Shown here: positions 737-62,091 of the stretch, piece by piece
Position numbering within the stretch: position 1 is the stretch's first letter
How the letters are laid out: each line of letters opens with the position of its first letter
IMG/VR virus record: IMGVR_UViG_3300028676_000003
Span: 248,001 to 312,000 of that record
Strand: one strand, 5' to 3'
DNA length: 64,000 nucleotides
Program-made: the position numbers and the translations under genes
Notes under the pieces: model-generated
The model's input: only the letters and a program-made list of their open reading frames with translations
Told to the model about the DNA's origin: nothing
The model's database searches: none

Positions 737-1861
737 ATGTTAGCAATACAAGAATATATCAAAAAACACGGAATAAATAAGGCAATTTCAGACTTTAATC
801 TAAAATCTAGAGAGTATGAAAACAAAATCTTATTGAAATACGACCAATTATCATCACCAACAATGATGGCAATGGCTGAAATGCAAGATTCTCGTGGTAT
901 TATCCTTGAAAAAGGAACTTGGAAGGTCTTATCACTTGCATTTAGAAAGTTCTTCAACTCAGAAGAAGGAAATGCACATAAAATTGATTGGAATACTGCC
1001 CGTGTACTAGAGAAACTAGATGGTACCCTTATACAATTGTATTGGGATGCACATAAAGGTAAGTGGTTTGCAGGTACTACAGGTACAGCAGAAGGTGAGG
1101 GTGAAGTGAATAATAAAAATGGTACTACATTTAATGACCTTTTTTTCCAAACAGTTGCTGAAAAATACAACTTGGATTTAAACAGACTTGATAAAAAATA
1201 CTGTTTTGTGTTCGAATTAACAACACCTTATAATATAGTAGTGAAGCCACACGGTGAATCATCTGCTACGTTATTAACTATTAGAAACCTTGAGACACTT
1301 GAAGAAGTTTGTTATGAAGAATTACTAAACCACGGTTCAGTATTAGGACTTCCAGTAGTTAAATCATTTGACCTTAATGCTAAGAACGTTGGAGCTTTGC
1401 TTCGTACATTCGAAAACATGCCATGGTCAGAAGAAGGTTATGTTGTTGTTGATGGAAACAATGATAGAATCAAGTGTAAAAACCCAGCTTATGTTGCGGT
1501 TCACCACTTAAAAGGTAAGTCAGCAGAACACAATATCATCACGATTGTTAAATCAAACGAGATTGAAGAATTTGGTTCTACTTTCCCTGAAAGAAAAGAA
1601 GAATTGTACAAGCTTAAGGCTAACTACGATATCCTTTTAGAAAAATTACTTGTAACTTGGGAAGAATTGAAATTACGTAAACCTAAGAATATCATGCCAG
1701 CCGAAAAGAAAAAATATGCGGCCGCTGTATTCGAAGTTTGCGAGAAACATGACTTAAAGCCATTTACAGGTTTATTCTTTGGACTAAACGATGGAAAGGT
1801 AGAAAGTGTTGAAAGCTTCCTTATGAACTACGACGATAAACTCTTATACAAGATGTTATGA
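737..1861 (+). CDS. RNA ligase, T4 Rnl1-like
   Basis: Motifs KFFN, EKLDGTLI (motif I), FELTTPYN.IV, EGYVV and RIKCKNPAY; preceded by a TACCTTTGT promoter at 709. Confidence 0.85.
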   Translation: MLAIQEYIKKHGINKAISDFNLKSREYENKILLKYDQLSSPTMMAMAEMQDSRGIILEKGTWKVLSLAFRKFFNSEEGNAHKIDWNTARVLEKLDGTLIQLYWDAHKGKWFAGTTGTAEGEGEVNNKNGTTFNDLFFQTVAEKYNLDLNRLDKKYCFVFELTTPYNIVVKPHGESSATLLTIRNLETLEEVCYEELLNHGSVLGLPVVKSFDLNAKNVGALLRTFENMPWSEEGYVVVDGNNDRIKCKNPAYVAVHHLKGKSAEHNIITIVKSNEIEEFGSTFPERKEELYKLKANYDILLEKLLVTWEELKLRKPKNIMPAEKKKYAAAVFEVCEKHDLKPFTGLFFGLNDGKVESVESFLMNYDDKLLYKML

Positions 1862-3004: not shown

Positions 3005-4429
3005 ATGAAAATTAAACAAATTCTTGATGAAATCGCTGGTTTCAGTGGTAAATTGGATAAAGCGAAAGCCTTAACCAAATATAAAGACAATCAATTATTA
3101 AAAGATGTGATTTATCTTGCGCATTCGCCTAGGATTAAATTCTTTATTAAACAAATACCTGAGTATCAGTTCATCGAAGCAACAACTTCACTTGAAGACG
3201 CTTTAAATGACTTAAAACAAATCTCCGACAGATTTTACACAGGTGCGGCCGCTACAGAATTCCTTTTAGGTTTACTATCTTATACGGACCCTGATGATGC
3301 TTACGTAATTGAACGTATCATTGATAAAAATCTTAAGATAGGAATGGACACAGGTATCAATAAGGTAATCCCTAAATTGATTGAAGAAACTCCTTATCAA
3401 GGTGCTACATCATTCTCAGAGAAGGGTGCATCTAAGTTATTAGATAGAAAATCTAGAACTGATAAAAATGGAGTTACAAGTCATGTGATTTCACAGATTA
3501 AAGCTGATGGTTCTTACCGTAATGCAATCATAATTGATGGAAAGGTAGAACTCTTATCAAGACAAGGAGAAGTTTCAACTCTTACAGGTGCCAAGTTCTT
3601 AGATGAACTAGCTCAAATGCCTGACTGTGTTCTAAATGGTGAACTTACTGTTGATGGAATAGAAAACCGTGCAATTGCAAACGGAGTTGTTTCTAGCATC
3701 ATGGATATCACTCAGAAAGCAGAAGAAAGAGGTGAAGTAGAAACAGCTAAGAAAATCAAAGCCTTTACTGAAAAACACGGTGATATGGCAGAAATGATTA
3801 ATAGGTTACGCTTCACGGTTTGGGATATGATTAGTGTAGATGAATACTTAAAAGCAAGTTCAGATTTTCCATATTTGAACCGTTTTACTGGTCTTCAAAC
3901 ACTTTTGATTGAAAAAGCTTTCACAAATATTGAATTGATTGAAACTCTTTTTATTGACTCTTATGAAGAAGCAATGAATCATTTCTTAGACGCTCAAAAA
4001 AGAGGTCTTGAAGGAACAATCATCAAATCAAGTACTGCTGGTTGGAAAGATGGGAAACCAACTTACCAAATCAAAATGAAACTTGAAATGGATATGGACT
4101 TAAGAATCATCGGATTCAACTATGGTACCAAAGGTACTAAGAATGAGCATGTTATTAGTGTTCTACAGTTGGAAAGTGAAGATGGGTTATTGAAGACTAA
4201 TCCTGGTGGAATGACTGAGGCTATGATGGCTGATATCACTGAAAGACAAGATGAACTAATGGGAACAATCGTTCAAATTAGATGTTGCGGGTTATCTCAA
4301 ACAGATAAAGGTTGGTCAACACAACACCCAAGTATTGTTGAACTAAGAACAGATAAAGACTCTTGTGACACACTTGAATCTTGTATCGCTATTGAGAATA
4401 TGGCAAAAACACTAAACGTAAAAAAATAA
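3005..4429 (+). CDS. ATP-dependent DNA ligase (T4 gp30-like)
   Basis: QIKADG (motif I), LNGEL, FTVWD, EGTIIK and IKMK, with a C-terminal OB fold ending HP....R.DK. ATG at 3005 chosen over the upstream TTG. Confidence 0.9.
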   Translation: MKIKQILDEIAGFSGKLDKAKALTKYKDNQLLKDVIYLAHSPRIKFFIKQIPEYQFIEATTSLEDALNDLKQISDRFYTGAAATEFLLGLLSYTDPDDAYVIERIIDKNLKIGMDTGINKVIPKLIEETPYQGATSFSEKGASKLLDRKSRTDKNGVTSHVISQIKADGSYRNAIIIDGKVELLSRQGEVSTLTGAKFLDELAQMPDCVLNGELTVDGIENRAIANGVVSSIMDITQKAEERGEVETAKKIKAFTEKHGDMAEMINRLRFTVWDMISVDEYLKASSDFPYLNRFTGLQTLLIEKAFTNIELIETLFIDSYEEAMNHFLDAQKRGLEGTIIKSSTAGWKDGKPTYQIKMKLEMDMDLRIIGFNYGTKGTKNEHVISVLQLESEDGLLKTNPGGMTEAMMADITERQDELMGTIVQIRCCGLSQTDKGWSTQHPSIVELRTDKDSCDTLESCIAIENMAKTLNVKK

Positions 4430-4611
4430 TGGAAACAATCGGTATCATCATAGGAGTAATAGTAGCTGTTATTCTTGTAGCAGGGTTAATTACCTATGCA
4501 GTAGTAGCTTATAGTATTTGGAAAGTTAAAAAAAGAGCTGAGAAGTTCATATCTGAAAAAGGTGTAGAGACTGCTGTTAAAATAACTCAAAAGTTATTAG
4601 ATAAAAAATAG
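4429..4611 (+). CDS. small membrane protein
   Basis: N-terminal hydrophobic helix and basic tail. Confidence 0.55.
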   Translation: METIGIIIGVIVAVILVAGLITYAVVAYSIWKVKKRAEKFISEKGVETAVKITQKLLDKK

Positions 4612-4661
4612 GATATTAGTTTTAATAATGATACCTTTGTATTCAAATATTAAAACAATAT

Positions 4662-8997: not shown

Positions 8998-10284
8998 ATG
9001 ATAACAAACGAGAATGGTTTAAGATATGCTAAATTGATGCACGTTTCAGTTGATAACGGTCATACAGATAATAGCAATAAAGTTTATATCATGGAAGAAC
9101 TTTCCAATGGTACAATCAAATGTGAATACGGTAGAGTCGGTAATTCGATGGCCGTAGATATCAAACCCGCAAGCAAATGGGATGCAACCTATAAGCAGAA
9201 AACAAGCAAAACGAAGGGTTACACTGATGTAACTGAGTTTATGGCTGAACCTGTTGTAGATGCCGCTAAACCTTCAGGTAACAACCTGATTGATGATATT
9301 CCTGATGCTCTTGTTAAAGAACTTATTAAACGTTTAAGCGACTTCGCAAACAAATCGATTCAACAAAACTATAAGGTAACTCAAGATGCAGTATCTGAGG
9401 CCCAAGTAGTTGCGGCTCAAGCTTTATTAACTAGAATTACAACAACAGTTGCAGTTGGAGTTAGTAAAAATGACTTGAATGAAATGCTTATGCAATTATA
9501 TACGATAATCCCTCGTAACATGAGAAATGTTAAGGATTATTTGTTAGATGAAATCAAAACTGCCGATGATGTAAATCAAGCATTAGAGTTCTTGAATAAA
9601 GAACAAGCTACTCTTGATACAATGGCTGGTCAAGTTGATTTAATAAAGAAACAGAAGCCTGTAGTTGATACTGAAACCAAAGAAGTGAAACCATCAACAT
9701 ATACTATTCTTGACCAAATGGGTATTACAGCTGAGGTTGTAAATGATGCTCCAACTATCAAGATGGTAAGAGATATGCTTGAAGGACATGGTAGAAAACT
9801 TCACAGAGTCTACGCAATTACCAATAAGAAATCACAACCGCTTTACGATACCAAATTGGATTCAAGCAAAAACAAATTGGTTGAACACTTGTTCCACGGT
9901 TCAAGAAATGCCAATTGGTTTAACATTCTTCAAACTGGTCTTATGATTAGACCTTCGGGAGCTGGTTATAATGGTTCTATGTTTGATGATGGTATCTACT
10001 TCGCTAACGATGCAGATAAATCAATGGGTTACACCGATGGTGGTCGTTGGGCAGGTGGTGGAAACGCAAGTTACACTTACTTAGGTGTATTTAGCGTTCA
10101 CTTAGGAAACCAATTACACGTTCATAGACATGATTCTTCATGTTACAAAATTGGAACCAAGTGTAGAAACGAGGGTTATGATTCGGTTTATGCTCACAAA
10201 GGAGCTTCACTTAGAAAAGATGAGTTAATTATTTATAATTCTGCTCAGTGTACTGTTAAATATTTAGTAGAACTTAAAAATTAA
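8998..10284 (+). CDS. PARP-family ADP-ribosyltransferase (WGR + regulatory + catalytic domains)
   Basis: N-terminal NKVY...EYGRVG...KGY (WGR), LYTIIP (regulatory), then LFHGSR..N...IL..GL, GSMFDDGIYFA....KS.GY and DELIIY (H-Y-E triad). Confidence 0.9.
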   Translation: MITNENGLRYAKLMHVSVDNGHTDNSNKVYIMEELSNGTIKCEYGRVGNSMAVDIKPASKWDATYKQKTSKTKGYTDVTEFMAEPVVDAAKPSGNNLIDDIPDALVKELIKRLSDFANKSIQQNYKVTQDAVSEAQVVAAQALLTRITTTVAVGVSKNDLNEMLMQLYTIIPRNMRNVKDYLLDEIKTADDVNQALEFLNKEQATLDTMAGQVDLIKKQKPVVDTETKEVKPSTYTILDQMGITAEVVNDAPTIKMVRDMLEGHGRKLHRVYAITNKKSQPLYDTKLDSSKNKLVEHLFHGSRNANWFNILQTGLMIRPSGAGYNGSMFDDGIYFANDADKSMGYTDGGRWAGGGNASYTYLGVFSVHLGNQLHVHRHDSSCYKIGTKCRNEGYDSVYAHKGASLRKDELIIYNSAQCTVKYLVELKN

Positions 10285-23348: not shown

Positions 23349-23424
23349 GGGAGTATAGCTCAGTTGGTTCAGCAGCGTCTCGTTTACACCGAGAAGGTCG
23401 GGGGTTCGAATCCCTCTACTCCTA
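23349..23424 (+). tRNA. tRNA-Val(TAC)
   Basis: TCTCG-TTTACAC-CGAGA. Confidence 0.9.
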
Positions 23425-23428
23425 CTAA

Positions 23429-23507
23429 AAGATAGTTTCAGCAAGCAAACGGTTAAAAATTTGTCTCATAAACAAACTGAGTGGTTCAATCCCACAAAAC
23501 TATCTTG
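23429..23507 (+). ncRNA. CAGCAA-stem element (skipping-rope-like) enclosing a Met(CAT) anticodon arm and a T arm
   Basis: AAGATAGTT.CAGCAA ... TTTGT-CTCATAA-ACAAA, GTGG-TTCAATC-CCAC ... AACTATCTT-G. Confidence 0.6.
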
Positions 23508-23512
23508 AATTT

Positions 23513-23595
23513 GGCCGAGTGGTGGAATTGGTAGACACGCTAGTTTAAGAAGCTAGTGCTGTAATGGCATGCGGGTTCGAGTCCCGCCTTGGTCA
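23513..23595 (+). tRNA. tRNA-Leu(AAG), A34
   Basis: CTAGT-TTAAGAA-GCTAG, Leu D arm, long variable arm. Confidence 0.85.
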
Positions 23596-23617
23596 CAAAC
23601 GTTTTAAATAAATTATT

Positions 23618-24886
23618 ATGGAAAATACAGAATATGTCTGTGTAATGTTCCCTTATCCTTCAGGAGATGGATTACATGTTGGGCATGTCTATAACTACGC
23701 AATCGTCGATAGTTATTGCCGATGGAAACGTTACAATAAAATTCCAGTCTTTCAACCATTTGGATATGATTCATTTGGATTGCCAGCGGAAAACTACGCA
23801 AAAAAGGTCGGTAGAGACCCAAAAGAAGTCACTTACGAAAATATCGCAAAGTTCCGTAAACAAATGGAACGAATGAACACTCAATATGAAGAATTATTAG
23901 TTACATCTGATGAATCTTACTATGTATGGAGTCAAAGATTATTTACTGAATTACATAGCAGAGGGTTAGCCTACCAAAAGATGGGTCCTGTAAATCATTG
24001 TTCAAGCTGTGAAACAGTCTTGGCTAATGAACAAGTTAAGGACGACCATTGTGAAAGATGTGGTACAAGAGTAGAAATCAAAGATTTAAACCAATGGTAT
24101 TTCAAAATTACTGACTATAAGCAACGATTAATTGATAACTTGGATAAGATTGATTATCCTGAGAAAACAAAGAAACAGCAATTGCATTGGTTAGAGAACT
24201 TAAATGATTGGTGTGTTTCAAGACAGCGAAAATGGGGAACTCCAATACCGTTGATTGATTCAGAAGACACCTTAGATACATTCGTTGATAGTTCATTCTA
24301 TTTTTTAAGATACTTGGACCCAAATAACTTAGAAGAATTGGTTGATATCAATAAAGCTAAGCAAGTTGACTTATATGTTGGTGGAAACGAACATGCTTGT
24401 ATGCACTTGATTTATGCTAGGTTTATCACGATGTTCTTACATGATTGTGGTTATATCCCTTTTGATGAGCCTTTTAAGAAGGTAATTCACCAAGGAATGA
24501 TTACTCATAATGGAGAAAAAATGTCCAAGTCAAAAGGCAACGTAATAAATCCTGATGATTATGACCCTGATGAATTGAGGTTATATTCAATGTTTATCGG
24601 CCATTATTTTGACGGTGGAGATTGGGATGATTCAAAGATTAGCGGAATTAGACGTTTTATTGGAAGATTTGGTAAATGGACAAATGAATCTACTCAAGAA
24701 GGTGAAACTATTGACTTAACAGCATTTAAAGAGACTATTAATGGTTATGTAATATCGTTTAAGTTCAATAAGGTTGTTAGTACATTCATGGAGTTTTACA
24801 ACAAGAATAAGAACAAAACATTAAGTGTATCAACAGCTAACGATTTGATTGAAATCTTACGTGTGTTTGCACCGAGTTTTAAATAA
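23618..24886 (+). CDS. leuS: minimal leucyl-tRNA synthetase (no CP1 editing domain, truncated C-terminus)
   Basis: MFPYPSG.GLHVGH, GYDSFGLPAEN, Zn knuckle, DWCVSRQR.WGTPIP, DTFVDSS.YFLRY, GG.EHA.MHL.YARF and KMSKS; only 422 aa. Confidence 0.9.
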   Translation: MENTEYVCVMFPYPSGDGLHVGHVYNYAIVDSYCRWKRYNKIPVFQPFGYDSFGLPAENYAKKVGRDPKEVTYENIAKFRKQMERMNTQYEELLVTSDESYYVWSQRLFTELHSRGLAYQKMGPVNHCSSCETVLANEQVKDDHCERCGTRVEIKDLNQWYFKITDYKQRLIDNLDKIDYPEKTKKQQLHWLENLNDWCVSRQRKWGTPIPLIDSEDTLDTFVDSSFYFLRYLDPNNLEELVDINKAKQVDLYVGGNEHACMHLIYARFITMFLHDCGYIPFDEPFKKVIHQGMITHNGEKMSKSKGNVINPDDYDPDELRLYSMFIGHYFDGGDWDDSKISGIRRFIGRFGKWTNESTQEGETIDLTAFKETINGYVISFKFNKVVSTFMEFYNKNKNKTLSVSTANDLIEILRVFAPSFK

Positions 24887-31129: not shown

Positions 31130-31200
31130 GAAGCGTTCGTCTAGTGGACCAGGACACAGCCAATGGGGCTGAAACACAGGTTCGAGTCCTGTACGCTTTG
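31130..31200 (+). ncRNA. Glu-type tRNA body with a 5-nt anticodon loop
   Basis: GAAGCGT/ACGCTTT, D arm GTCTAGTGGACCAGGAC, CAGCC-AATGG-GGCTG. Confidence 0.65.
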
Positions 31201-31290
31201 CAATTAAGAGCACGTGGAAGTACGATAGCCCCCACAGTATAGAAAAAAACTAAGGTATCGTTGACTTCATGGTGGAAAGAAACCATATTT

Positions 31291-31362: not shown

Positions 31363-31364
31363 CA

Positions 31365-31420
31365 AGAGACTGTTACTAATTTATAGGACTCCGAGTGAGG
31401 GGAAGCGTAGAATTAGAATT
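31365..31420 (+). repeat. inter-tRNA motif, copy 1 (AGACTGTT..TAATTYATAG...GCGTAGAATTA)
   Basis: Further copies at 52482-52545 and 52826-52881. Confidence 0.75.
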
Positions 31421-31423
31421 TTT

Positions 31424-33533: not shown

Positions 33534-33618
33534 GGGAGTGTAGCTCAGTTGGTAGAGCAGGATGTATAGGAATGCATACTTTAAATCTGTGTCAATGGTT
33601 CGATTCCATTCACTCTTA
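33534..33618 (+). ncRNA. tRNA-like RNA with an enlarged anticodon arm
   Basis: Canonical D arm (AGCTCAGTTGGTAGAGC) and T arm; about 20 nt in the anticodon-loop position. Confidence 0.6.
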
Positions 33619-33627
33619 CAAAATATT

Positions 33628-38589: not shown

Positions 38590-38722
38590 AAAATTCGTTC
38601 AGCATAAAAAGCAATTCCAAACTTCGGGTCGTAGGTTCGAGTCCTACCCTCTCCACTAGGGTTATAATCGGAGAGGTAGCTCGGTCGGATTAGAGCAGAA
38701 GTCAGCAAAAAAAGCAATTTTG
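38590..38722 (+). ncRNA. circularly permuted tRNA (3' half precedes 5' half) flanked by 18-nt direct repeats
   Basis: 3' half ACTTC-GGGTC-GTAGG-TTCGAGT-CCTAC-CCTCTCC-A (38621-38655), 14-nt linker, 5' half GGAGAGG-TA-GCTC...GAGC-A-GAAGT (38670-38702). Confidence 0.75.
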
Positions 38723-38731
38723 ATACCCCAT

Positions 38732-38850
38732 ATAGTAGTCGTCTAGTGGACAAAGACACCGCCCCTGTATTCGTGTATGAGGTTCGACTCCTCTTTAGCA
38801 GTGGTGGTATGACGTAGGTGGAAACATTGGTTCAAATCCAATCTGCTGTA
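38732..38850 (+). ncRNA. Glu/Asp-type tRNA body with an ~50-nt insertion in the anticodon loop
   Basis: ATAGTAG/CTGCTGT, D arm GTCTAGTGGACAAAGAC; the CCGCC/GGTGG stem encloses a second T-arm (GAGG-TTCGACT-CCTC). Confidence 0.6.
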
Positions 38851-38884: not shown

Positions 38885-39013
38885 AAGATTATTTCAGCAA
38901 TCAAACAAAAAAAATCTATTTGAAAGAGAGCGGAGGGGTTCGACTCCCCATTTGTCTATAAGAGGTATGACAATTTGTTGTAACGGTAGCACTAATAAAA
39001 AAAATTAATCTTG
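38885..39013 (+). ncRNA. CAGCAA-stem element enclosing a permuted Gln(TTG)-like tRNA
   Basis: AAGATTA...CAGCAA, anticodon arm, GGGG-TTCGACT-CCCC, TTGTC-linker-GACAA, D arm TTGTAACGGTAGCA, closing TAATCTT-G. Confidence 0.6.
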
Positions 39014-39023
39014 ATTCTCACAT

Positions 39024-39094
39024 ACTTCTGTCGTCTAAGTGTTAGGATGCCCTCGTTGTAGAGGGTGATAGTGGTTCAAATCCATTCGGAAGTG
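39024..39094 (+). ncRNA. Glu-type tRNA body with a 6-nt anticodon loop
   Basis: ACTTCTG/CGGAAGT, CCCTC-GTTGTA-GAGGG. Confidence 0.65.
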
Positions 39095-39240
39095 CAAATA
39101 CTGACCTCCACTTCAGTAATTATTTCGTTTTTTAGAGGTGGCTCCCTTTCCACAATTGTGGATATAACCAAAAATTGCTGTGGCAGACCACGGGCATCTG
39201 ATAGGTCAACTATCTATACAGGGGGCGAAACTAAATGTTT

Positions 39241-49387: not shown

Positions 49388-50195
49388 TTAATAAGATGTT
49401 GGTTCGCCCATGCTTTTTAACATAAGGCCGCTTATGGTCTTCAGGATAAACATAGTGATATGTAGAAAGCGATTTAGCGGAAGCAAGATTGCGTTGGGAA
49501 TTTATTACCAATCCGAGTAAGCGATGATAAACGCAGTGTTTATGTAAAGGCAACAAGAGACAAAATCTGTTGGAGTTGGAAGTAAACATTATAGCCCAAA
49601 TTTTGATTCATGGGTTATTGAGTACGAAAGTATAATAGAGGTTTATCAGGATTTGGTGAATAACTGTAAAAGGGGAATAAGCTGGGTCCAGTATTTAGAT
49701 TATGGTGTAGCTGAAAGGTGATATTAATCGAAGGTACCATGTTCGAGAGAGCATATCGGGGTGTCGTTAGCTGGGCTACTCAAAAGGTAGTACGTTAGCA
49801 AATCTGAGGACACATCCTGAACTGAAATGAATCGATGCAATTTATTTAGGTTTTTAACCTGAAATATCTTTTAAGAAAAGGAAATTTTATAAAAAGCAAA
49901 AGTTCCTCAGAACATGATTTGAAAAATGAGTTATACTGTTGTAAAATACAGTTGTTGCTAGGCCGCAAGCCAAAGTGACAAAATAAAGTAAGTAGTTCTA
50001 AGCTAATAGCCCGCAAGCTATGCAGACTCGCAAGGTCAGTCGGATGAAAATGGAGTTTATATAGAATCATGTAGTGATTGCAGAATCGTATATCTGTCTC
50101 ATTGTTGACTATTCCTGTAGCAATATAGGTGTGTGTAACAAACCGAAAGGTTTCAAAACGTCAACAGTATAGCTGAACACTCAGGCGACTACAAA
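49388..50195 (+). ncRNA. large structured ncRNA, GOLLD-like
   Basis: About 800 nt with no plausible + ORF and its own promoter (49350-49381). Many GNRA-capped hairpins (GCAA, GAAA) and a CTCAAAAGG element, next to tRNAs. Family assignment is from memory only. Confidence 0.55.
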
Positions 50196-50253: not shown

Positions 50254-50326
50254 TCCGTGTTAGAGCAGTCAGGTAGCTCGCTCCCGTGTGAGGGAGAGGT
50301 CAGGGGTTCGAATCCTTTACACGGTA
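50254..50326 (+). ncRNA. initiator-like tRNA body with a 6-nt anticodon loop
   Basis: 1:72 mismatch, D stem GAGC/GCTC, CTCCC-GTGTGA-GGGAG. Confidence 0.65.
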
Positions 50327-50542
50327 CTAATTTTTACTAGACATATTAATTAAATTCGGGAGCAATACATATAGTATTGAATAGGTGGAAACCCTTATGC
50401 TCCCACTAGGCTTCGTAATTAGGAAATATGGATGCGGTTAAAAGAAACGACCAAAGATAAGGTTTCACGGCAAAAGGCTCTATTCGTTAACCAGCGAGCT
50501 TTTACTTATCTTTGGAAATTTCAAAAAAAAATGACAAAAGGC

Positions 50543-52476: not shown

Positions 52477-52481
52477 CGAGA

Positions 52482-52545
52482 AGAGACTGTTATTAATTCA
52501 TAGAACACCATACTTAGTAAGTACTGGAAGCGTAGAATTAAAAAT
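52482..52545 (+). repeat. inter-tRNA motif, copy 2
   Basis: AGAGACTGTTATTAATTCATAG...GAAGCGTAGAATTAA. Confidence 0.75.
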
Positions 52546-52547
52546 TA

Positions 52548-52817: not shown

Positions 52818-52825
52818 CGAAGATA

Positions 52826-52881
52826 AGACTGTTGCTAATTCATAGGGTACCAAGGTAAAAACTGCGTAGAATTAGAAAATT
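52826..52881 (+). repeat. inter-tRNA motif, copy 3
   Basis: AAGACTGTTGCTAATTCATAG...TGCGTAGAATTAG. Confidence 0.75.
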
Positions 52882-53197: not shown

Positions 53198-53257
53198 AAA
53201 ATGATTTCAGCAAATATTATCATCAAACTTTTAATTTGAAACAGATATATCATTTTG
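53198..53257 (+). ncRNA. CAGCAA-stem element enclosing a Lys(TTT) anticodon arm
   Basis: AAAATGAT..CAGCAA ... TCAAA-CTTTTAA-TTTGA ... ATCATTTT-G. Confidence 0.6.
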
Positions 53258-60978: not shown

Positions 60979-62091
60979 ATGTGGAAGTTTAAGTATTACG
61001 ATATAGAGAAGGGTCCTGATTGGACAGCAATTGAAAGGAATTGCGAGTGGTTTCGTGATATGAAAGACGTTCCACAAGACAAGATATGGCATGCCGAAGG
61101 TGATGTTCAAATCCATACAAAAATGGTTTGTGAAGCACTTATCCAATTGTCTGAATTTCAAGAACTTAGTGAAGAAAAGAAACACATTATGTTTACAGGT
61201 GCGCTTATGCACGACATAGAGAAACGTTCTACAACTACAACTGAGTTCAAGAATGACAGAGAGTGTATTATTGCTCCTAAGCATGCTGAAAGAGGTGAGA
61301 AAACAGCAAGAGAAATTCTTTATATGGATTTTGATTGTCCTTATCATTCTAGAGAACAAATCTGTAAGATTGTTAAGTGGCACGGGAAGCCTCTACACGA
61401 TGCATCTAATAAGACACTTGCTAGACTAGCAACACAAGTTCAATTACCATTTCTAGCAATGATTGCAAAGGCCGATATTCTTGGCCGTATTTGTACTGAT
61501 GCTGAAGAACACTTGGAAAGAATTGAATTTTTCCAAATGCAAGCAGAAGACATTGGTTGTTGGGGTCGTACAATGTACTTTCAAAATCAATTGATTGAAT
61601 ATGAAGCTTTAAAAACGGGTAATTTATATTCACATCGTTTTGATGATACGAAGTTTGAGGTAATGATGATGTCCGCAATCCCAGGTTCAGGCAAAGACCA
61701 CTACGTTAAGAATAACCTTCAAGGGTGGCCTGTAATCAGTCTTGACGATATTAGAGCTGAGCTTAAGGTTAAGCCTTTAGATAAAAAGGGTAACGGACAA
61801 GTGATTCAACTAGCTAAAAAGAGAGCTAAGGAACTAATGGCTAAGCATACAAATTTTGTATGGAATGCCACAAATATAACTCAACAAATGAGAGGTCAGT
61901 TGATTGAGTTATTTGAAGAATATGGTGGAAAGGTAACAATTGTTTATATTGAGGTCCCTTATAAGACTCTTATCAAGCAAAATAACGATAGAGAAGCGAT
62001 AGTTCCTCAAAGTGTTATTGAAAAGATGATTAGAAAATGGGAACCACCTATTCGTGAAGAAGCATATAGAATATTAACTTTTACAAATTAA
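60979..62091 (+). CDS. HD phosphohydrolase + P-loop (AAA_33) kinase fusion, RNA end-healing type
   Basis: PQD..WHAEGDV..HT, LMHDIEK, AD..GR; then IPGSGKD, ISLDDIR, VWNATN.....R. Confidence 0.85.
   Translation: MWKFKYYDIEKGPDWTAIERNCEWFRDMKDVPQDKIWHAEGDVQIHTKMVCEALIQLSEFQELSEEKKHIMFTGALMHDIEKRSTTTTEFKNDRECIIAPKHAERGEKTAREILYMDFDCPYHSREQICKIVKWHGKPLHDASNKTLARLATQVQLPFLAMIAKADILGRICTDAEEHLERIEFFQMQAEDIGCWGRTMYFQNQLIEYEALKTGNLYSHRFDDTKFEVMMMSAIPGSGKDHYVKNNLQGWPVISLDDIRAELKVKPLDKKGNGQVIQLAKKRAKELMAKHTNFVWNATNITQQMRGQLIELFEEYGGKVTIVYIEVPYKTLIKQNNDREAIVPQSVIEKMIRKWEPPIREEAYRILTFTN

What the first reader, a model, noticed from the sequence alone, without database searches (positions are those of the whole stretch)
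23429..23507. CAGCAA-stem element displaying a Met anticodon arm and a T arm
A 9-bp closing stem with CAGCAA and a 3' G encloses a perfect TTTGT-CTCATAA-ACAAA arm and a T-like hairpin, with no acceptor stem. It may be a decoy for anticodon nucleases or a partial member of the permuted-tRNA family.
Basis: partly seen in the sequence, partly recalled or inferred. Interest (0 to 1): 0.6.

Follow-up and report, generated by a model that had tools for sequence, protein, structure and literature searches.

The report
Phage Y-RNA-like tRNA-mimic RNA family
The flagged 79-base element is a conserved small RNA gene in a giant phage's tRNA array. It belongs to an apparently undescribed family that shares an end-stem plus a CAGCAA motif, carries pieces of tRNA, and is encoded beside a phage Ro60-like ring protein, much as Y RNAs are.

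Summary
At 23429-23507 a 10-bp end stem encloses UUUCAGCAA, an unpaired spacer, a 5-bp/7-nt arm with CAU, and a T-like arm. An unpaired G follows.

It is not a tRNA gene or a decayed one. The Rfam tRNA model gives only 17 bits, and no D stem forms.

It is one of at least five paralogues in this 368-kb phage. All share a "handle": an 8-bp terminal stem, UU(U/A)C(A/U)GCAA, and a 3' G. Their tRNA-derived cargo varies.

I found more than 25 further members in other phage contigs. Six are positional orthologues of this element, lying just upstream of tRNA-Leu(aag). All three helices covary across them.

The loop triplet varies (CAU, CAA, UAA, GUA), so the "Met anticodon" is not a conserved feature.

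The phage encodes a DUF2828+DUF7788 protein whose model matches Ro60/TROVE structures over its full length. In this phage and six relatives an RNA with the same handle lies directly downstream of that gene. Another contig has six short members flanking the gene. Cronobacter phage S13 also has one.

My best reading is a divergent Y-RNA-like RNA paired with a Ro60-like protein. Binding, expression and function are untested. The shortest members resemble Dictyostelium Class I RNAs.

The parts
23349..23425 (+). tRNA-Val(tac), the upstream neighbour; it ends 3 nt before the element
   Evidence: ARAGORN; Rfam tRNA 61.4 bits. The order Val(tac) - element - Leu(aag) recurs in L409.
23429..23438 (+). 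5' strand of the end stem. 23429-23436 is the 8-bp family register; 23437-23438 give two extra pairs in this copy.
   Evidence: Sequence. Handle stem 96-98% paired with compensatory changes. RNAalifold predicts it independently.
23436..23444 (+). Family motif TT(T/A)CAGCAA, here TTTCAGCAA; the proposed protein-binding determinant
   Evidence: CAGCAA is invariant in alignments A1, A3 and A6. C(A/T)GCAA is found in RNAs next to the Ro60-like gene. 8 window matches against 2.2 expected.
23445..23459 (+). Unpaired D-region remnant; GGTTAAAAA lies at 23451-23459 (possible G18/G19 equivalents)
   Evidence: GG(T/A)TAAA is conserved in all 7 E1-type sequences. No D stem is possible.
23460..23476 (+). 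Anticodon-like arm: 5-bp stem and 7-nt loop CTCATAA (triplet CAT)
   Evidence: Sequence. The helix is 83% paired with 3 covarying pairs in A6. The triplet varies among orthologues. RNAalifold does not predict this arm in the consensus.
23480..23496 (+). T-like arm: 4-bp stem GTGG/CCAC, loop TTCAATC, A.A outside
   Evidence: GTTCAA is invariant; 3 covarying pairs. Predicted by RNAalifold.
23497..23506 (+). 3' strand of the end stem (family register 23499-23506)
23507..23507 (+). Unpaired G that closes the handle; present in every member
23513..23596 (+). tRNA-Leu(aag), the downstream neighbour; it starts 6 nt after the element
   Evidence: E1-type elements in L204, L265, L393 and L409 lie 3-4 nt upstream of a tRNA-Leu(aag).
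38885..39013 (+). Paralogue E2: the same handle (AAGATTA/TAATCTT + G) around a circularly permuted tRNA-like cargo
   Evidence: Model R1 40.8 bits, E 9e-7 locally. Orthologues in L205, L215, L235, L253, L256 and L314. Their cargo matches the tRNA-like module of Rfam YrlA at 32.9 bits.
53198..53257 (+). Paralogue E3: the same handle around a TCAAA/CTTTTAA/TTTGA hairpin (triplet TTT), between tRNA-Gln and tRNA-Tyr
   Evidence: R1 67 bits. Orthologues in L235, L236 and L261 lie in the same position. L235 has a stem that differs at five of its eight pairs, all five changes compensatory.

Best explanation
The element is a small structured RNA gene, not a tRNA gene.

Processing (inferred). It is transcribed within the tRNA-Val / element / tRNA-Leu precursor. 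It is probably released when the flanking tRNAs are processed.

The handle (shown by comparison). The two ends pair in an 8-10-bp stem. That stem, the adjoining single-stranded UUUCAGCAA and the unpaired 3' G form a 'handle' shared by a family of phage RNAs.

The protein partner. I infer that the handle is the docking site of the phage's Ro60-like ring protein (DUF2828+DUF7788; gene at G000:217073-218509, outside the window). This would parallel the basal stem and GGUCCGA / GNCGAAG motif of Y RNAs docking on Ro60. The Ro60-like fold and the gene-RNA adjacency are shown; the binding itself is inferred.

The cargo. The variable interior displays tRNA parts: a GG-containing D-loop remnant, an anticodon-like arm and a T arm. 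By analogy with bacterial YrlA / RYPER, it would let the particle engage a tRNA-binding factor. Candidates are an exoribonuclease, a tRNA repair or modification enzyme, or a tRNA-directed host nuclease. This last step is speculative.
For: Family and structure:
- The handle model finds only E4, E1, E3 and E2 in the whole genome.
- The descriptor scan and IMG/VR pattern scans give 22 distinct sequences, three of them this phage's own, plus further E1-type ones.
- The handle stem is 96% paired, with 4 of 8 pairs showing double changes.
- The E1-type alignment of 7 sequences has 18 pairs at 90.5% paired, 9 with double changes, and 0/500 shuffles reach this.
- RNAalifold independently predicts the end stem and the T stem.
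- Position is conserved next to tRNA-Leu(aag).

Protein partner:
- The own phage has a DUF2828+DUF7788 ORF.
- Its AlphaFold2 model (pLDDT 75) matches 13 Ro60/TROVE chains over full length. The best are Thermus phage phiLo Ro60 (E 1.5e-9, TM 0.56), Xenopus Ro60 with Y RNA, and D. radiodurans Rsr.
- The nearest non-DUF2828 clusters in the ESM Atlas are all TROVE + vWA_Ro60.
- The DxSxS MIDAS motif is invariant.

Adjacency:
- A 125-200-nt RNA with the same handle and its own terminator lies directly downstream of the gene in the own phage and six relatives. Four of those relatives were reached through the protein only.
- Six short members flank the gene in L046.
- A handle RNA with permuted tRNA-like cargo lies about 750 nt downstream of the gene in cultured Cronobacter phage S13.

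Co-occurrence: 6 of 7 DUF2828-positive records examined have family RNAs. None of 4 complete DUF2828-negative relatives gives a hit.

Precedent: phage Ro60 binds phage Y-like RNAs (PMC12135203), and bacterial Y RNAs mimic tRNA (PMC4201824).
Against:
- This copy lies 53 kb from the Ro60-like gene.
- The handle motif differs from the known Ro60-binding motifs GGUCCGA / GNCGAAN0-1G / CGAA.
- Model R1 scores the gene-adjacent RNAs weakly. The best is 23.7 bits at E 0.097, and it does not hit the own phage's copy. Their membership therefore rests on inspection of the shared handle and on alignment A7.
- One relative (G009) has the protein but no detectable family RNA.
- Part of the co-occurrence sample was found through the RNA, so it is biased.
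- Alignment A6 was fitted to the model's structure.
- The anticodon-like arm is not recovered by RNAalifold.
Confidence: 0.6

Rival explanations
1. Decaying tRNA gene: a tRNA-CAU copy that lost its D stem and is drifting, with no function.
For: - The Rfam tRNA model aligns over its full length at 17 bits.
- The element sits where a tRNA would sit in the array.
- The phage already has four tRNA-CAU genes, so a fifth would be dispensable.
- At 32-34% G+C it looks like spacer, whereas real tRNAs here are 50-59%.
Against: - The element is kept at the same position in at least five other phages.
- Compensatory changes occur in all three helices, and the single-stranded blocks CAGCAA, GGUUAAA and GUUCAA are invariant.
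- The same handle occurs on members with no tRNA-like interior (E4, the L046 set) and beside the Ro60-like gene.
- Damage is confined to the D region. Only one of the other 17 tRNA-register pairs is mismatched.
Confidence: 0.04
2. Working but unorthodox tRNA: a D-stem-less tRNA that is CCA-tailed, charged and used in decoding (AUG, or AUA after lysidine formation).
For: - The 7-nt loop has U33 and A37/A38.
- The T loop is canonical, and a GG is available for the T-loop contact.
- The end stem abuts the T stem in this copy.
- ARAGORN calls the L421 orthologue a tRNA-Tyr.
- M. smegmatis YrlA is cleaved by RNase P and CCA-tailed.
Against: - The terminal stem is 8-10 bp, not 7.
- Orthologues have 6-9 unpaired bases between the T stem and the end stem, which breaks the acceptor/T coaxial helix.
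- The triplet changes among positional orthologues, which a decoding tRNA would not tolerate at a fixed locus.
- The handle is shared with members that lack any T arm or anticodon arm.
Confidence: 0.07
3. Anticodon-nuclease decoy: the displayed anticodon-like arms soak up host tRNA-cleaving defence nucleases, with or without the ring protein.
For: - The phage invests in tRNA supply and repair: 62 tRNAs, an Rnl1-like RNA ligase, and an HD + AAA_33 kinase-like protein.
- E3's UUU-loop hairpin is conserved in four phages. From my own knowledge, tRNA-Lys(UUU) is the PrrC target.
- The cargo is modular, as a decoy set would be.
Against: - The triplet in the E1 type is not conserved (CAU, CAA, UAA, GUA).
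- E4 and the L046 members have no anticodon-like arm.
- Natural targets of such nucleases usually need modified bases. Nothing here tests that.
Confidence: 0.15
4. Processing punctuation: a structured spacer that only helps RNase P, RNase Z or RNase E separate neighbouring tRNAs.
For: It lies 3 and 6 nt from the flanking tRNAs. Other tRNA gaps of 60-70 nt in this phage also hold recurring structured sequences.
Against: - Family members beside the Ro60-like gene have their own promoter-like and terminator signals and no flanking tRNAs.
- The six L046 members are not in a tRNA array.
- An invariant 9-nt single-stranded motif is not needed for such a role.
Confidence: 0.06

Closest known systems
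Bacterial and phage Y RNAs (YrlA, Rfam RF02553; D. radiodurans Yrn1; Thermus phage phiLo Yrl1/Yrl2) with Ro60/Rsr
   Same: - The 5' and 3' ends pair in a basal stem.
- A conserved motif sits on the 5' strand next to that stem.
- The variable module mimics tRNA. The cargo of E2-type members matches the YrlA T arm / closed acceptor / D arm module at 32.9 bits.
- Family members are encoded beside a Ro60-fold protein on the same strand.
- There are several paralogues per genome.
   Different: - The motif is UU(U/A)C(A/U)GCAA, not GNCGAAN0-1G / CGAA.
- The protein belongs to Pfam DUF2828+DUF7788, not TROVE (PF05731 gives no hit in this phage).
- Most copies are scattered inside tRNA arrays, far from the protein gene.
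- Cargo ranges from nothing, to single tRNA arms, to a whole permuted tRNA.
- The Rfam YrlA model never matches the stem part.
Dictyostelium Class I RNAs (Rfam RF01414)
   Same: - A short terminal stem whose sequence varies while pairing is kept.
- A conserved motif directly 3' of the 5' strand. CCUUACAGCAA compares with (G)UUACAGCAA here.
- An A/U-rich variable middle.
- A length of about 60 nt.
- An AAG start and a C-U-G end.

E4 and its L428 orthologue match the model over its full length at 33.4 and 29.1 bits. Class I features are taken from PMC7919456.
   Different: - Both scores are below the gathering score of 41.5.
- The E1, E2 and E3 types and the L046 set do not hit the model.
- The host is a bacteriophage, with no DUSE promoter.
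- The known Class I partner is an RRM protein, Rnp1A.
- Class I RNAs were reported as restricted to Dictyostelia.
tRNA and tRNA pseudogenes (Rfam RF00005)
   Same: Array position, T loop, 7-nt loop with U33, and a 7-bp inner register of the end stem. The alignment covers the full model length.
   Different: 17 bits against a gathering score of 29. There is no D stem, C at position 8, low G+C, and a conserved non-tRNA motif. ARAGORN at default settings does not call it.
Phage T4 stable RNAs 'species 1 and 2' (rnaC, rnaD) in the T4 tRNA cluster (from my own knowledge, not checked here)
   Same: Small stable RNAs of unknown role that are co-transcribed and co-processed with phage tRNAs.
   Different: No sequence comparison was made. 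T4 is not known to me to carry the handle or a DUF2828 gene.
Circularly permuted tRNA genes (red alga Cyanidioschyzon merolae; from my own knowledge)
   Same: E2-type cargo has the order anticodon-like arm, T arm, 3' acceptor strand, loop, 5' acceptor strand, D arm.
   Different: Here the acceptor is closed by a loop, as in YrlA. Nothing suggests maturation into a linear tRNA. E1 itself is not permuted.

Membership tests
tRNA (RF00005) | Score at or above the curated gathering threshold (29 bits) | tested here: not met
   17.0 bits, E 0.25 in a 131-nt search. Not listed in the 34.5-kb scan at E <= 5. Not called by ARAGORN.
tRNA (RF00005) | Cloverleaf with a D stem | tested here: not met
   The 21 nt between the end stem and the anticodon-like arm cannot form a 3-4-bp D stem in this copy or in any of the six orthologues.
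tRNA (RF00005) | Continuous acceptor/T coaxial helix of 12 bp | tested here: not met
   The end stem is 8-10 bp. In L265, L393, L409 and L421, 6-9 unpaired bases separate it from the T stem.
tRNA (RF00005) | Aminoacylation and CCA end | not testable with these tools
   No CCA is encoded, but none of this phage's tRNAs encodes one.
Y RNA / YrlA (RF02553) | Basal stem joining the 5' and 3' ends | tested here: met
   8-bp stem, 96-98% paired with compensatory changes.
Y RNA / YrlA (RF02553) | Ro60-binding motif GNCGAAN0-1G (bacteria) or GGUCCGA (animals) on the 5' strand | tested here: not met
   The motif in that position is UU(U/A)C(A/U)GCAA. Motif definitions come from PMC4201824.
Y RNA / YrlA (RF02553) | tRNA-like module (T arm, closed acceptor-like stem, D arm) | tested here: inconclusive
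   E2-type members match model positions 24-84 at 32.9 bits (E 1.6e-5), below the gathering score of 69. E1 has only the T arm, a GG remnant and an extra anticodon-like arm.
Y RNA / YrlA (RF02553) | Encoded near a Ro60 orthologue, on the same strand | tested here: inconclusive
   This holds for the family: the gene-adjacent RNA in 7 phages, six members in L046, and one in phage S13. The protein has a Ro60 fold but belongs to a different Pfam family. This copy is 53 kb from the gene.
Y RNA / YrlA (RF02553) | Binds the Ro60 ring | not testable with these tools
   The complex predictor takes proteins only.
Dictyostelium Class I RNA (RF01414) | Score at or above the gathering threshold (41.5 bits) | tested here: not met
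   E4 scores 33.4 bits and its L428 orthologue 29.1 bits. E1 gives no hit at E <= 10.
Dictyostelium Class I RNA (RF01414) | Short terminal stem plus an 11-nt motif next to its 5' strand, ~60 nt, CUGU end | tested here: inconclusive
   The stem and 8-9 of 11 motif bases are shared, and the end is YUG rather than CUGU. E4, E3 and the L046 members are 51-69 nt, but E1 is 79 nt and carries tRNA arms.
Dictyostelium Class I RNA (RF01414) | Dictyostelid host with a DUSE promoter about 60 nt upstream | tested here: not met
   The record is a 368-kb phage with an OmpA-domain protein and rho-independent terminators. The elements lie inside tRNA operons.
CAGCAA-handle phage RNA family (defined here; models R1, R2) | 8-bp stem at positions -10 to -3 of the motif, UU(U/A)CAGCAA, and an unpaired G after the 3' strand | tested here: met
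   All three features are present at 23429-23507. The R1 score of 73.5 bits is by construction. Independent members L204, L248, L261, L236, L265 and L235 score 43-64 bits.
CAGCAA-handle phage RNA family (defined here; models R1, R2) | Positional orthologues in other phages with covarying helices | tested here: met
   L204, L265, L393, L409, L421 and L248.

The most novel reading that the evidence does not exclude
The handle (terminal stem + UUACAGCAA + 3' G) may be an ancient recognition module for DUF2828-type Ro60 paralogues, shared between phages and eukaryotes. If so, the Dictyostelium Class I RNAs, whose function has been unknown since their discovery, would be Y-RNA-like partners of a Ro60-like protein. 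Phages would use the same module as a programmable scaffold that presents interchangeable tRNA parts to host tRNA-directed enzymes or defence nucleases.
Probability: 0.1. Interest if true: 0.92.

Novelty: new variant of a known kind. Interest (0 to 1): 0.75.

Why it matters
- **An unexplained protein family gets a candidate partner.** DUF2828 proteins are very common in large phages. I found at least 6,923 homologues and 711 GenBank phage records, including cultured T4-like phages. They are annotated only as 'RNA-binding protein'. This work gives them a fold (Ro60) and a candidate RNA partner with a simple, testable recognition motif.
- **Spacers in phage tRNA arrays can be genes.** Some 'spacers' and odd 'tRNA-OTHER' features are conserved non-tRNA genes that mimic parts of tRNA. 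This affects tRNA annotation and ideas about why phages carry tRNA arrays.
- **Y RNAs are broader than thought.** The Y-RNA concept would extend to a new protein subfamily and a new binding motif.
- **It bears on tRNA-centred phage-host conflict.** The modular cargo suggests a way to direct a ring protein to different tRNA-binding targets.
- **It opens a test for Class I RNAs.** The resemblance to Dictyostelium Class I RNAs offers a concrete experiment on an old open question.

Tried and rejected
- **Thermodynamic significance.** The MFE z-scores of E1-E4 are unremarkable (-0.1 to -1.4), so folding energy alone says nothing.
- **ARAGORN with lowered thresholds or in mitochondrial mode.** It gave only implausible folds of the element.
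- **Recent duplicate of one of the phage's 62 tRNAs.** No close paralogue exists; the best global alignments are poor.
- **Synteny through the neighbouring LeuRS-like gene.** 35 related loci were found, but the tRNA array is not kept except in the same phage.
- **BLAST against GenBank phages.** Only the flanking tRNAs matched.
- **Exact and gapped patterns built on the CAU loop plus T loop.** These found only the same phage, an ordinary tRNA-Met and a giant-virus permuted tRNA.
- **The 15-mer TTTCAGCAANCAAAC.** It gave chance matches only.
- **TTWCAGCAA sites in ten LeuRS-related phage records.** Those I fetched and read held no family member. Most sites in G006-G010 were not read, but model R1 found nothing in those five records.
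- **Canonical Ro60 (TROVE PF05731) in the own phage.** Absent.
- **Single-sequence AlphaFold2 of the DUF2828 protein.** Too poor to use, pLDDT 41. It was redone with a 25-sequence alignment.
- **Model R1 on the RNAs beside the Ro60-like gene and on phages S13 and nt-1.** Weak or no hits, because of long inserts and motif variants. In nt-1 I did not look further.
- **Avesson et al. 2011 on Class I RNA-binding proteins.** Not held in the library.
- **Literature searches for DUF2828 / PF11443.** They returned only unrelated plant and tardigrade papers.

No alternative genetic code was used, although the phage carries a CUA-anticodon tRNA.
Full report
**Setting.** The window is bases 248001-312000 of a 368,549-bp IMG/VR virus record rated complete. 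It is a giant phage.
- ARAGORN finds 62 tRNA genes in the genome, 40 of them in the window. All the window's tRNA genes lie on the + strand. They include four tRNA-CAU genes and a CUA-anticodon tRNA.
- The window also encodes an Rnl1-like RNA ligase, a DNA ligase, a PARP-like protein, an OmpA-domain protein and an HD + AAA_33 kinase-like protein.
- A 422-aa LeuRS-like ORF lies just downstream of the finding.

**The observation.**
- A perfect 10-bp stem joins 23429-23438 to 23497-23506.
- CAGCAA lies at 23439-23444.
- A 15-nt unpaired stretch ends in GGTTAAAAA.
- A perfect 5-bp arm carries the loop CTCATAA (23460-23476).
- A 4-bp T-like arm carries the loop TTCAATC (23481-23495).
- An unpaired G lies at 23507.

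The element fills the gap between tRNA-Val(tac) and tRNA-Leu(aag), at 3 and 6 nt from them. Rfam at curated thresholds sees only tRNAs in the window and not this element. At relaxed thresholds the tRNA model aligns over its full length at 17 bits, well under the cut-off of 29, with the D arm treated as an insertion. Folding energy is unremarkable.

**Not a tRNA copy.** The element has no close paralogue among the phage's tRNAs. It is A+T-rich at 32-34% G+C, against 50-59% for the real tRNAs shown. It cannot form a D stem.

**A family within the genome.** TT(T/A)CAGCAA is over-represented in the window: 8 matches against 2.2 expected. Four copies sit in tRNA-array gaps on the tRNA strand, each preceded by an A-rich strand that pairs with a downstream strand followed by G.
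- E1 is the finding.
- E2 lies at 38885-39013.
- E3 lies at 53198-53257.
- E4 lies at G000:225237-225298, outside the window. It is the last element of a tRNA operon before a terminator.

In their alignment the 8-bp stem is in the same register relative to the motif. It is 96% paired, and four pairs show changes on both sides; slid controls give at most 52%. A covariance model of this handle (R1) finds only these four in the whole genome, at 76, 73.5, 67 and 41 bits. The next hit scores 27. With filters off, the model showed that E2's 3' strand lies 105 nt further on. E2 therefore encloses a circularly permuted tRNA-like module.

**The family outside this genome.** Relatives found through the LeuRS-like gene do not keep the array, and loop-based patterns found nothing. 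A degenerate pattern of the 5' half of the handle, followed by a descriptor scan of my own, gave 22 distinct sequences, three of them this phage's own E1, E3 and E4. The descriptor required an 8/8-paired stem in fixed register and a 3' G. A second pattern added more E1-type copies. Four cargo types recur:
- **E1 type:** a GG spacer, an anticodon-like arm and a T arm.
- **E3 type:** a UCAAA / CUUUUAN / UUUGA hairpin.
- **E2 type:** 125-130 nt with a permuted tRNA-like cargo.
- **Short type:** 51-69 nt with no obvious interior structure.

The L235 orthologue of E3 has a near-identical interior, but five of its eight stem pairs differ, all with compensatory changes (AGGGTGGT/ACCACCCT against AAAATGAT/ATCATTTT).

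**The E1 type.** Seven distinct sequences were aligned to model R2.
- 18 pairs are 90.5% paired, and 9 have changes on both sides.
- None of 500 shuffles reaches any of the four informative measures.
- Slid controls give 33-46% pairing.
- The alignment was fitted to the model, which favours the structure. Even so, RNAalifold on the same alignment recovers the end stem and the T stem. It does not recover the anticodon-like arm.
- CAGCAA, GG(U/A)UAAA, GUUCAA and UCUUG are invariant.
- In L204, L265, L393 and L409 the element lies 3-4 nt upstream of tRNA-Leu(aag). L409 repeats the order Val(tac) / element / Leu(aag) seen in the window.
- The loop triplet is CAU here, CAA in L204, UAA in L265, L393, L409 and L248, and GUA in L421. 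The 'Met anticodon' is therefore not a conserved property.
- In four orthologues, 6-9 unpaired bases separate the T stem from the end stem. This is incompatible with a tRNA acceptor/T helix.

**Links to known RNA families.**
- E4 matches Rfam's Dictyostelium Class I RNA model over its full length at 33.4 bits (cut-off 41.5; E 2.6e-5 for the genome). Its orthologue in L428 scores 29.1 bits.
- Class I RNAs are defined by a short terminal stem with compensatory variation, an 11-nt motif next to its 5' strand, a variable middle, a length of about 60 nt, and conserved AAG and CUGU ends (PMC7919456). The short phage members share most of this.
- The cargo of E2-type members matches the tRNA-like module of the bacterial Y RNA YrlA: 32.9 bits, E 1.6e-5, model positions 24-84 of 114. 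It does not match the YrlA Ro-binding stem.
- A further YrlA-like module lies at window 38623-38700.

**The protein lead.**
- In contig L046, six short members flank a 491-aa ORF on the same strand. That ORF carries Pfam DUF2828 and DUF7788.
- The own phage has a 479-aa homologue at G000:217073-218509. It has no canonical TROVE protein.
- With DUF2828 clusters excluded, the nearest ESM Atlas clusters are all TROVE + vWA_Ro60 (score 0.93).
- A 25-sequence alignment keeps a DxSxS MIDAS motif.
- The AlphaFold2 model built on that alignment (pLDDT 75) has Ro60/TROVE chains as its 13 best PDB matches, aligned over full length. They include Thermus phage phiLo Ro60, Xenopus Ro60 bound to Y RNA, and D. 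radiodurans Rsr (E 1.5e-9 to 2.7e-5, TM up to 0.57). The next matches are isolated vWA domains.
- PHROGs and RefSeq call the family 'RNA-binding protein'.
- The family is large: at least 6,923 homologues, and 711 GenBank phage records.

**Gene-RNA adjacency.** Directly downstream of the Ro60-like gene lies a conserved 125-200-nt RNA. This holds in the own phage (G000:218564-218762) and in six relatives; four of the relatives were reached only through the protein.
- It begins AAAG(A/G/U)UG-NN-UN-C(A/U)GCAA.
- It ends CA(U/C)CUUG.
- Where the contig extends that far, its own terminator follows.
- The outer stem and the G are the same as in E1 and E2. One stem position covaries (GAUG/CAUC against GGUG/CACC).

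R1 scores these RNAs weakly, so their membership rests on the shared handle as read from alignment A7.

Relative L428 also has an E4 orthologue after tRNA-Met, and another member in the same array.

In cultured Cronobacter phage S13 the gene is followed by three RNAs.
- Two are over-long 'tRNA' features whose anticodon arm is replaced by a module containing UAUUCAGCA.
- The third has the full handle (AGGATGC ... TA-CAGCAA ... GCATCCT-G) around a permuted tRNA-like cargo.

Six of seven DUF2828-positive records examined hold family RNAs. None of four complete DUF2828-negative relatives gave an R1 hit. This sample is small and partly biased.

**Interpretation.** The element is a member of a phage RNA family built like a Y RNA. 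It has a basal stem, a conserved motif on the 5' side, and a tRNA-mimicking module, and the family is encoded with a Ro60-fold protein. Precedents exist.
- Bacterial Y RNAs mimic tRNA and lie within 4 kb of rsr (PMC4201824).
- Thermus phage Ro60 binds two phage Y-like RNAs and host PNPase (PMC12135203).

Four things are new here: the protein subfamily, the motif, the dispersal of paralogues inside tRNA arrays, and the modular cargo. I found no description of this family in Rfam 15 or in the searched literature.

Shown: the family, its conserved structure, the Ro60-like fold, and the adjacency. Inferred: processing from the tRNA precursor, binding of the handle by the ring protein, and any role of the cargo.

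**Limits.** There is no expression evidence. The covariation sample is small, and the association with the protein is circumstantial. The Class I resemblance is sub-threshold and may be convergent.

The costly protein word search was used once. I used it because the mechanism rests on the identity of this protein and an alignment was needed for the fold.

Noticed in passing
window 49756-50187 (+): Full-length match to the GOLLD RNA model at 95.6 bits, E 5.5e-24, below the gathering score of 150. It lies just upstream of a tRNA-like gene at 50254-50327, as GOLLD RNAs often do in phages.
   Followed up: no
window 38623-38700 (+): Sub-threshold YrlA-like tRNA-like module (29.3 bits, E 0.016): T arm, closed acceptor and D arm, followed by another CAGCAA. 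It lies just upstream of a 119-nt tRNA-model hit (38732-38850) and of E2.
   Followed up: partly
window 31364-31423, 52478-52547, 52819-52881 (+): A second recurring spacer family between tRNAs, 60-70 nt long. It shares AGACTGTT..TAATT.ATAG ... GCGTAGAATTAGAA. No Rfam family hit it.
   Followed up: no
window 33534-33619, 31130-31201, 39024-39095, 50254-50327; G000:228804-228879: Unusual tRNAs: one with a 4-base anticodon (agga), a tRNA-His with anticodon ATG, two with 2-base 'anticodons' by ARAGORN, and a CUA-anticodon (amber-reading) tRNA outside the window.
   Followed up: no
window 737-1861, 60979-62091, 8998-10284, 23618-24886: An RNA-repair and tRNA-related gene set: an Rnl1-like RNA ligase, an HD + AAA_33 (polynucleotide-kinase-like) protein, a PARP-like protein, and a short 422-aa LeuRS-like ORF whose relatives in 35 phage contigs are 60-70% identical.
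   Followed up: partly
L432 (Cronobacter phage S13, NC_028773.1) 4396-4516 and 4526-4638: Two features annotated tRNA-Ser (121 nt) and tRNA-OTHER (113 nt) are tRNA-like RNAs with CCA ends. Their anticodon arm is replaced by a conserved module, ACGCAAACUGAYAAGUUUGUAUUCAGCA. They lie next to the Ro60-like gene and are probably mis-annotated partner RNAs.
   Followed up: partly
L011 (IMGVR_UViG_3300032236_002285), about 230-315 of the 700 nt upstream of its LeuRS gene: An 86-nt type-II (long variable arm) tRNA with a CAU anticodon and a weak D stem. It sits between tRNA-Leu(aag) and tRNA-Leu(caa), a positional analogue of the finding in a 476-kb relative.
   Followed up: no
L183 (giant-virus contig GVMAG-S-ERX556068-66) about 9000-9098; L190 216-330; L428 15972-16325: Three unrelated items: a probable circularly permuted tRNA in a giant-virus contig, a tRNA with a roughly 50-nt insertion in the anticodon region in phage G009, and a phage-encoded tmRNA (66 bits) in relative L428.
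   Followed up: no
L425 (G009:76500-81500), downstream of its DUF2828 gene: This relative has the Ro60-like gene but no CAGCAA handle RNA. Instead, the downstream region holds two copies of a ...TTCCCCACCAATTG motif that look like tRNA 3' ends. It may be a different partner RNA.
   Followed up: no
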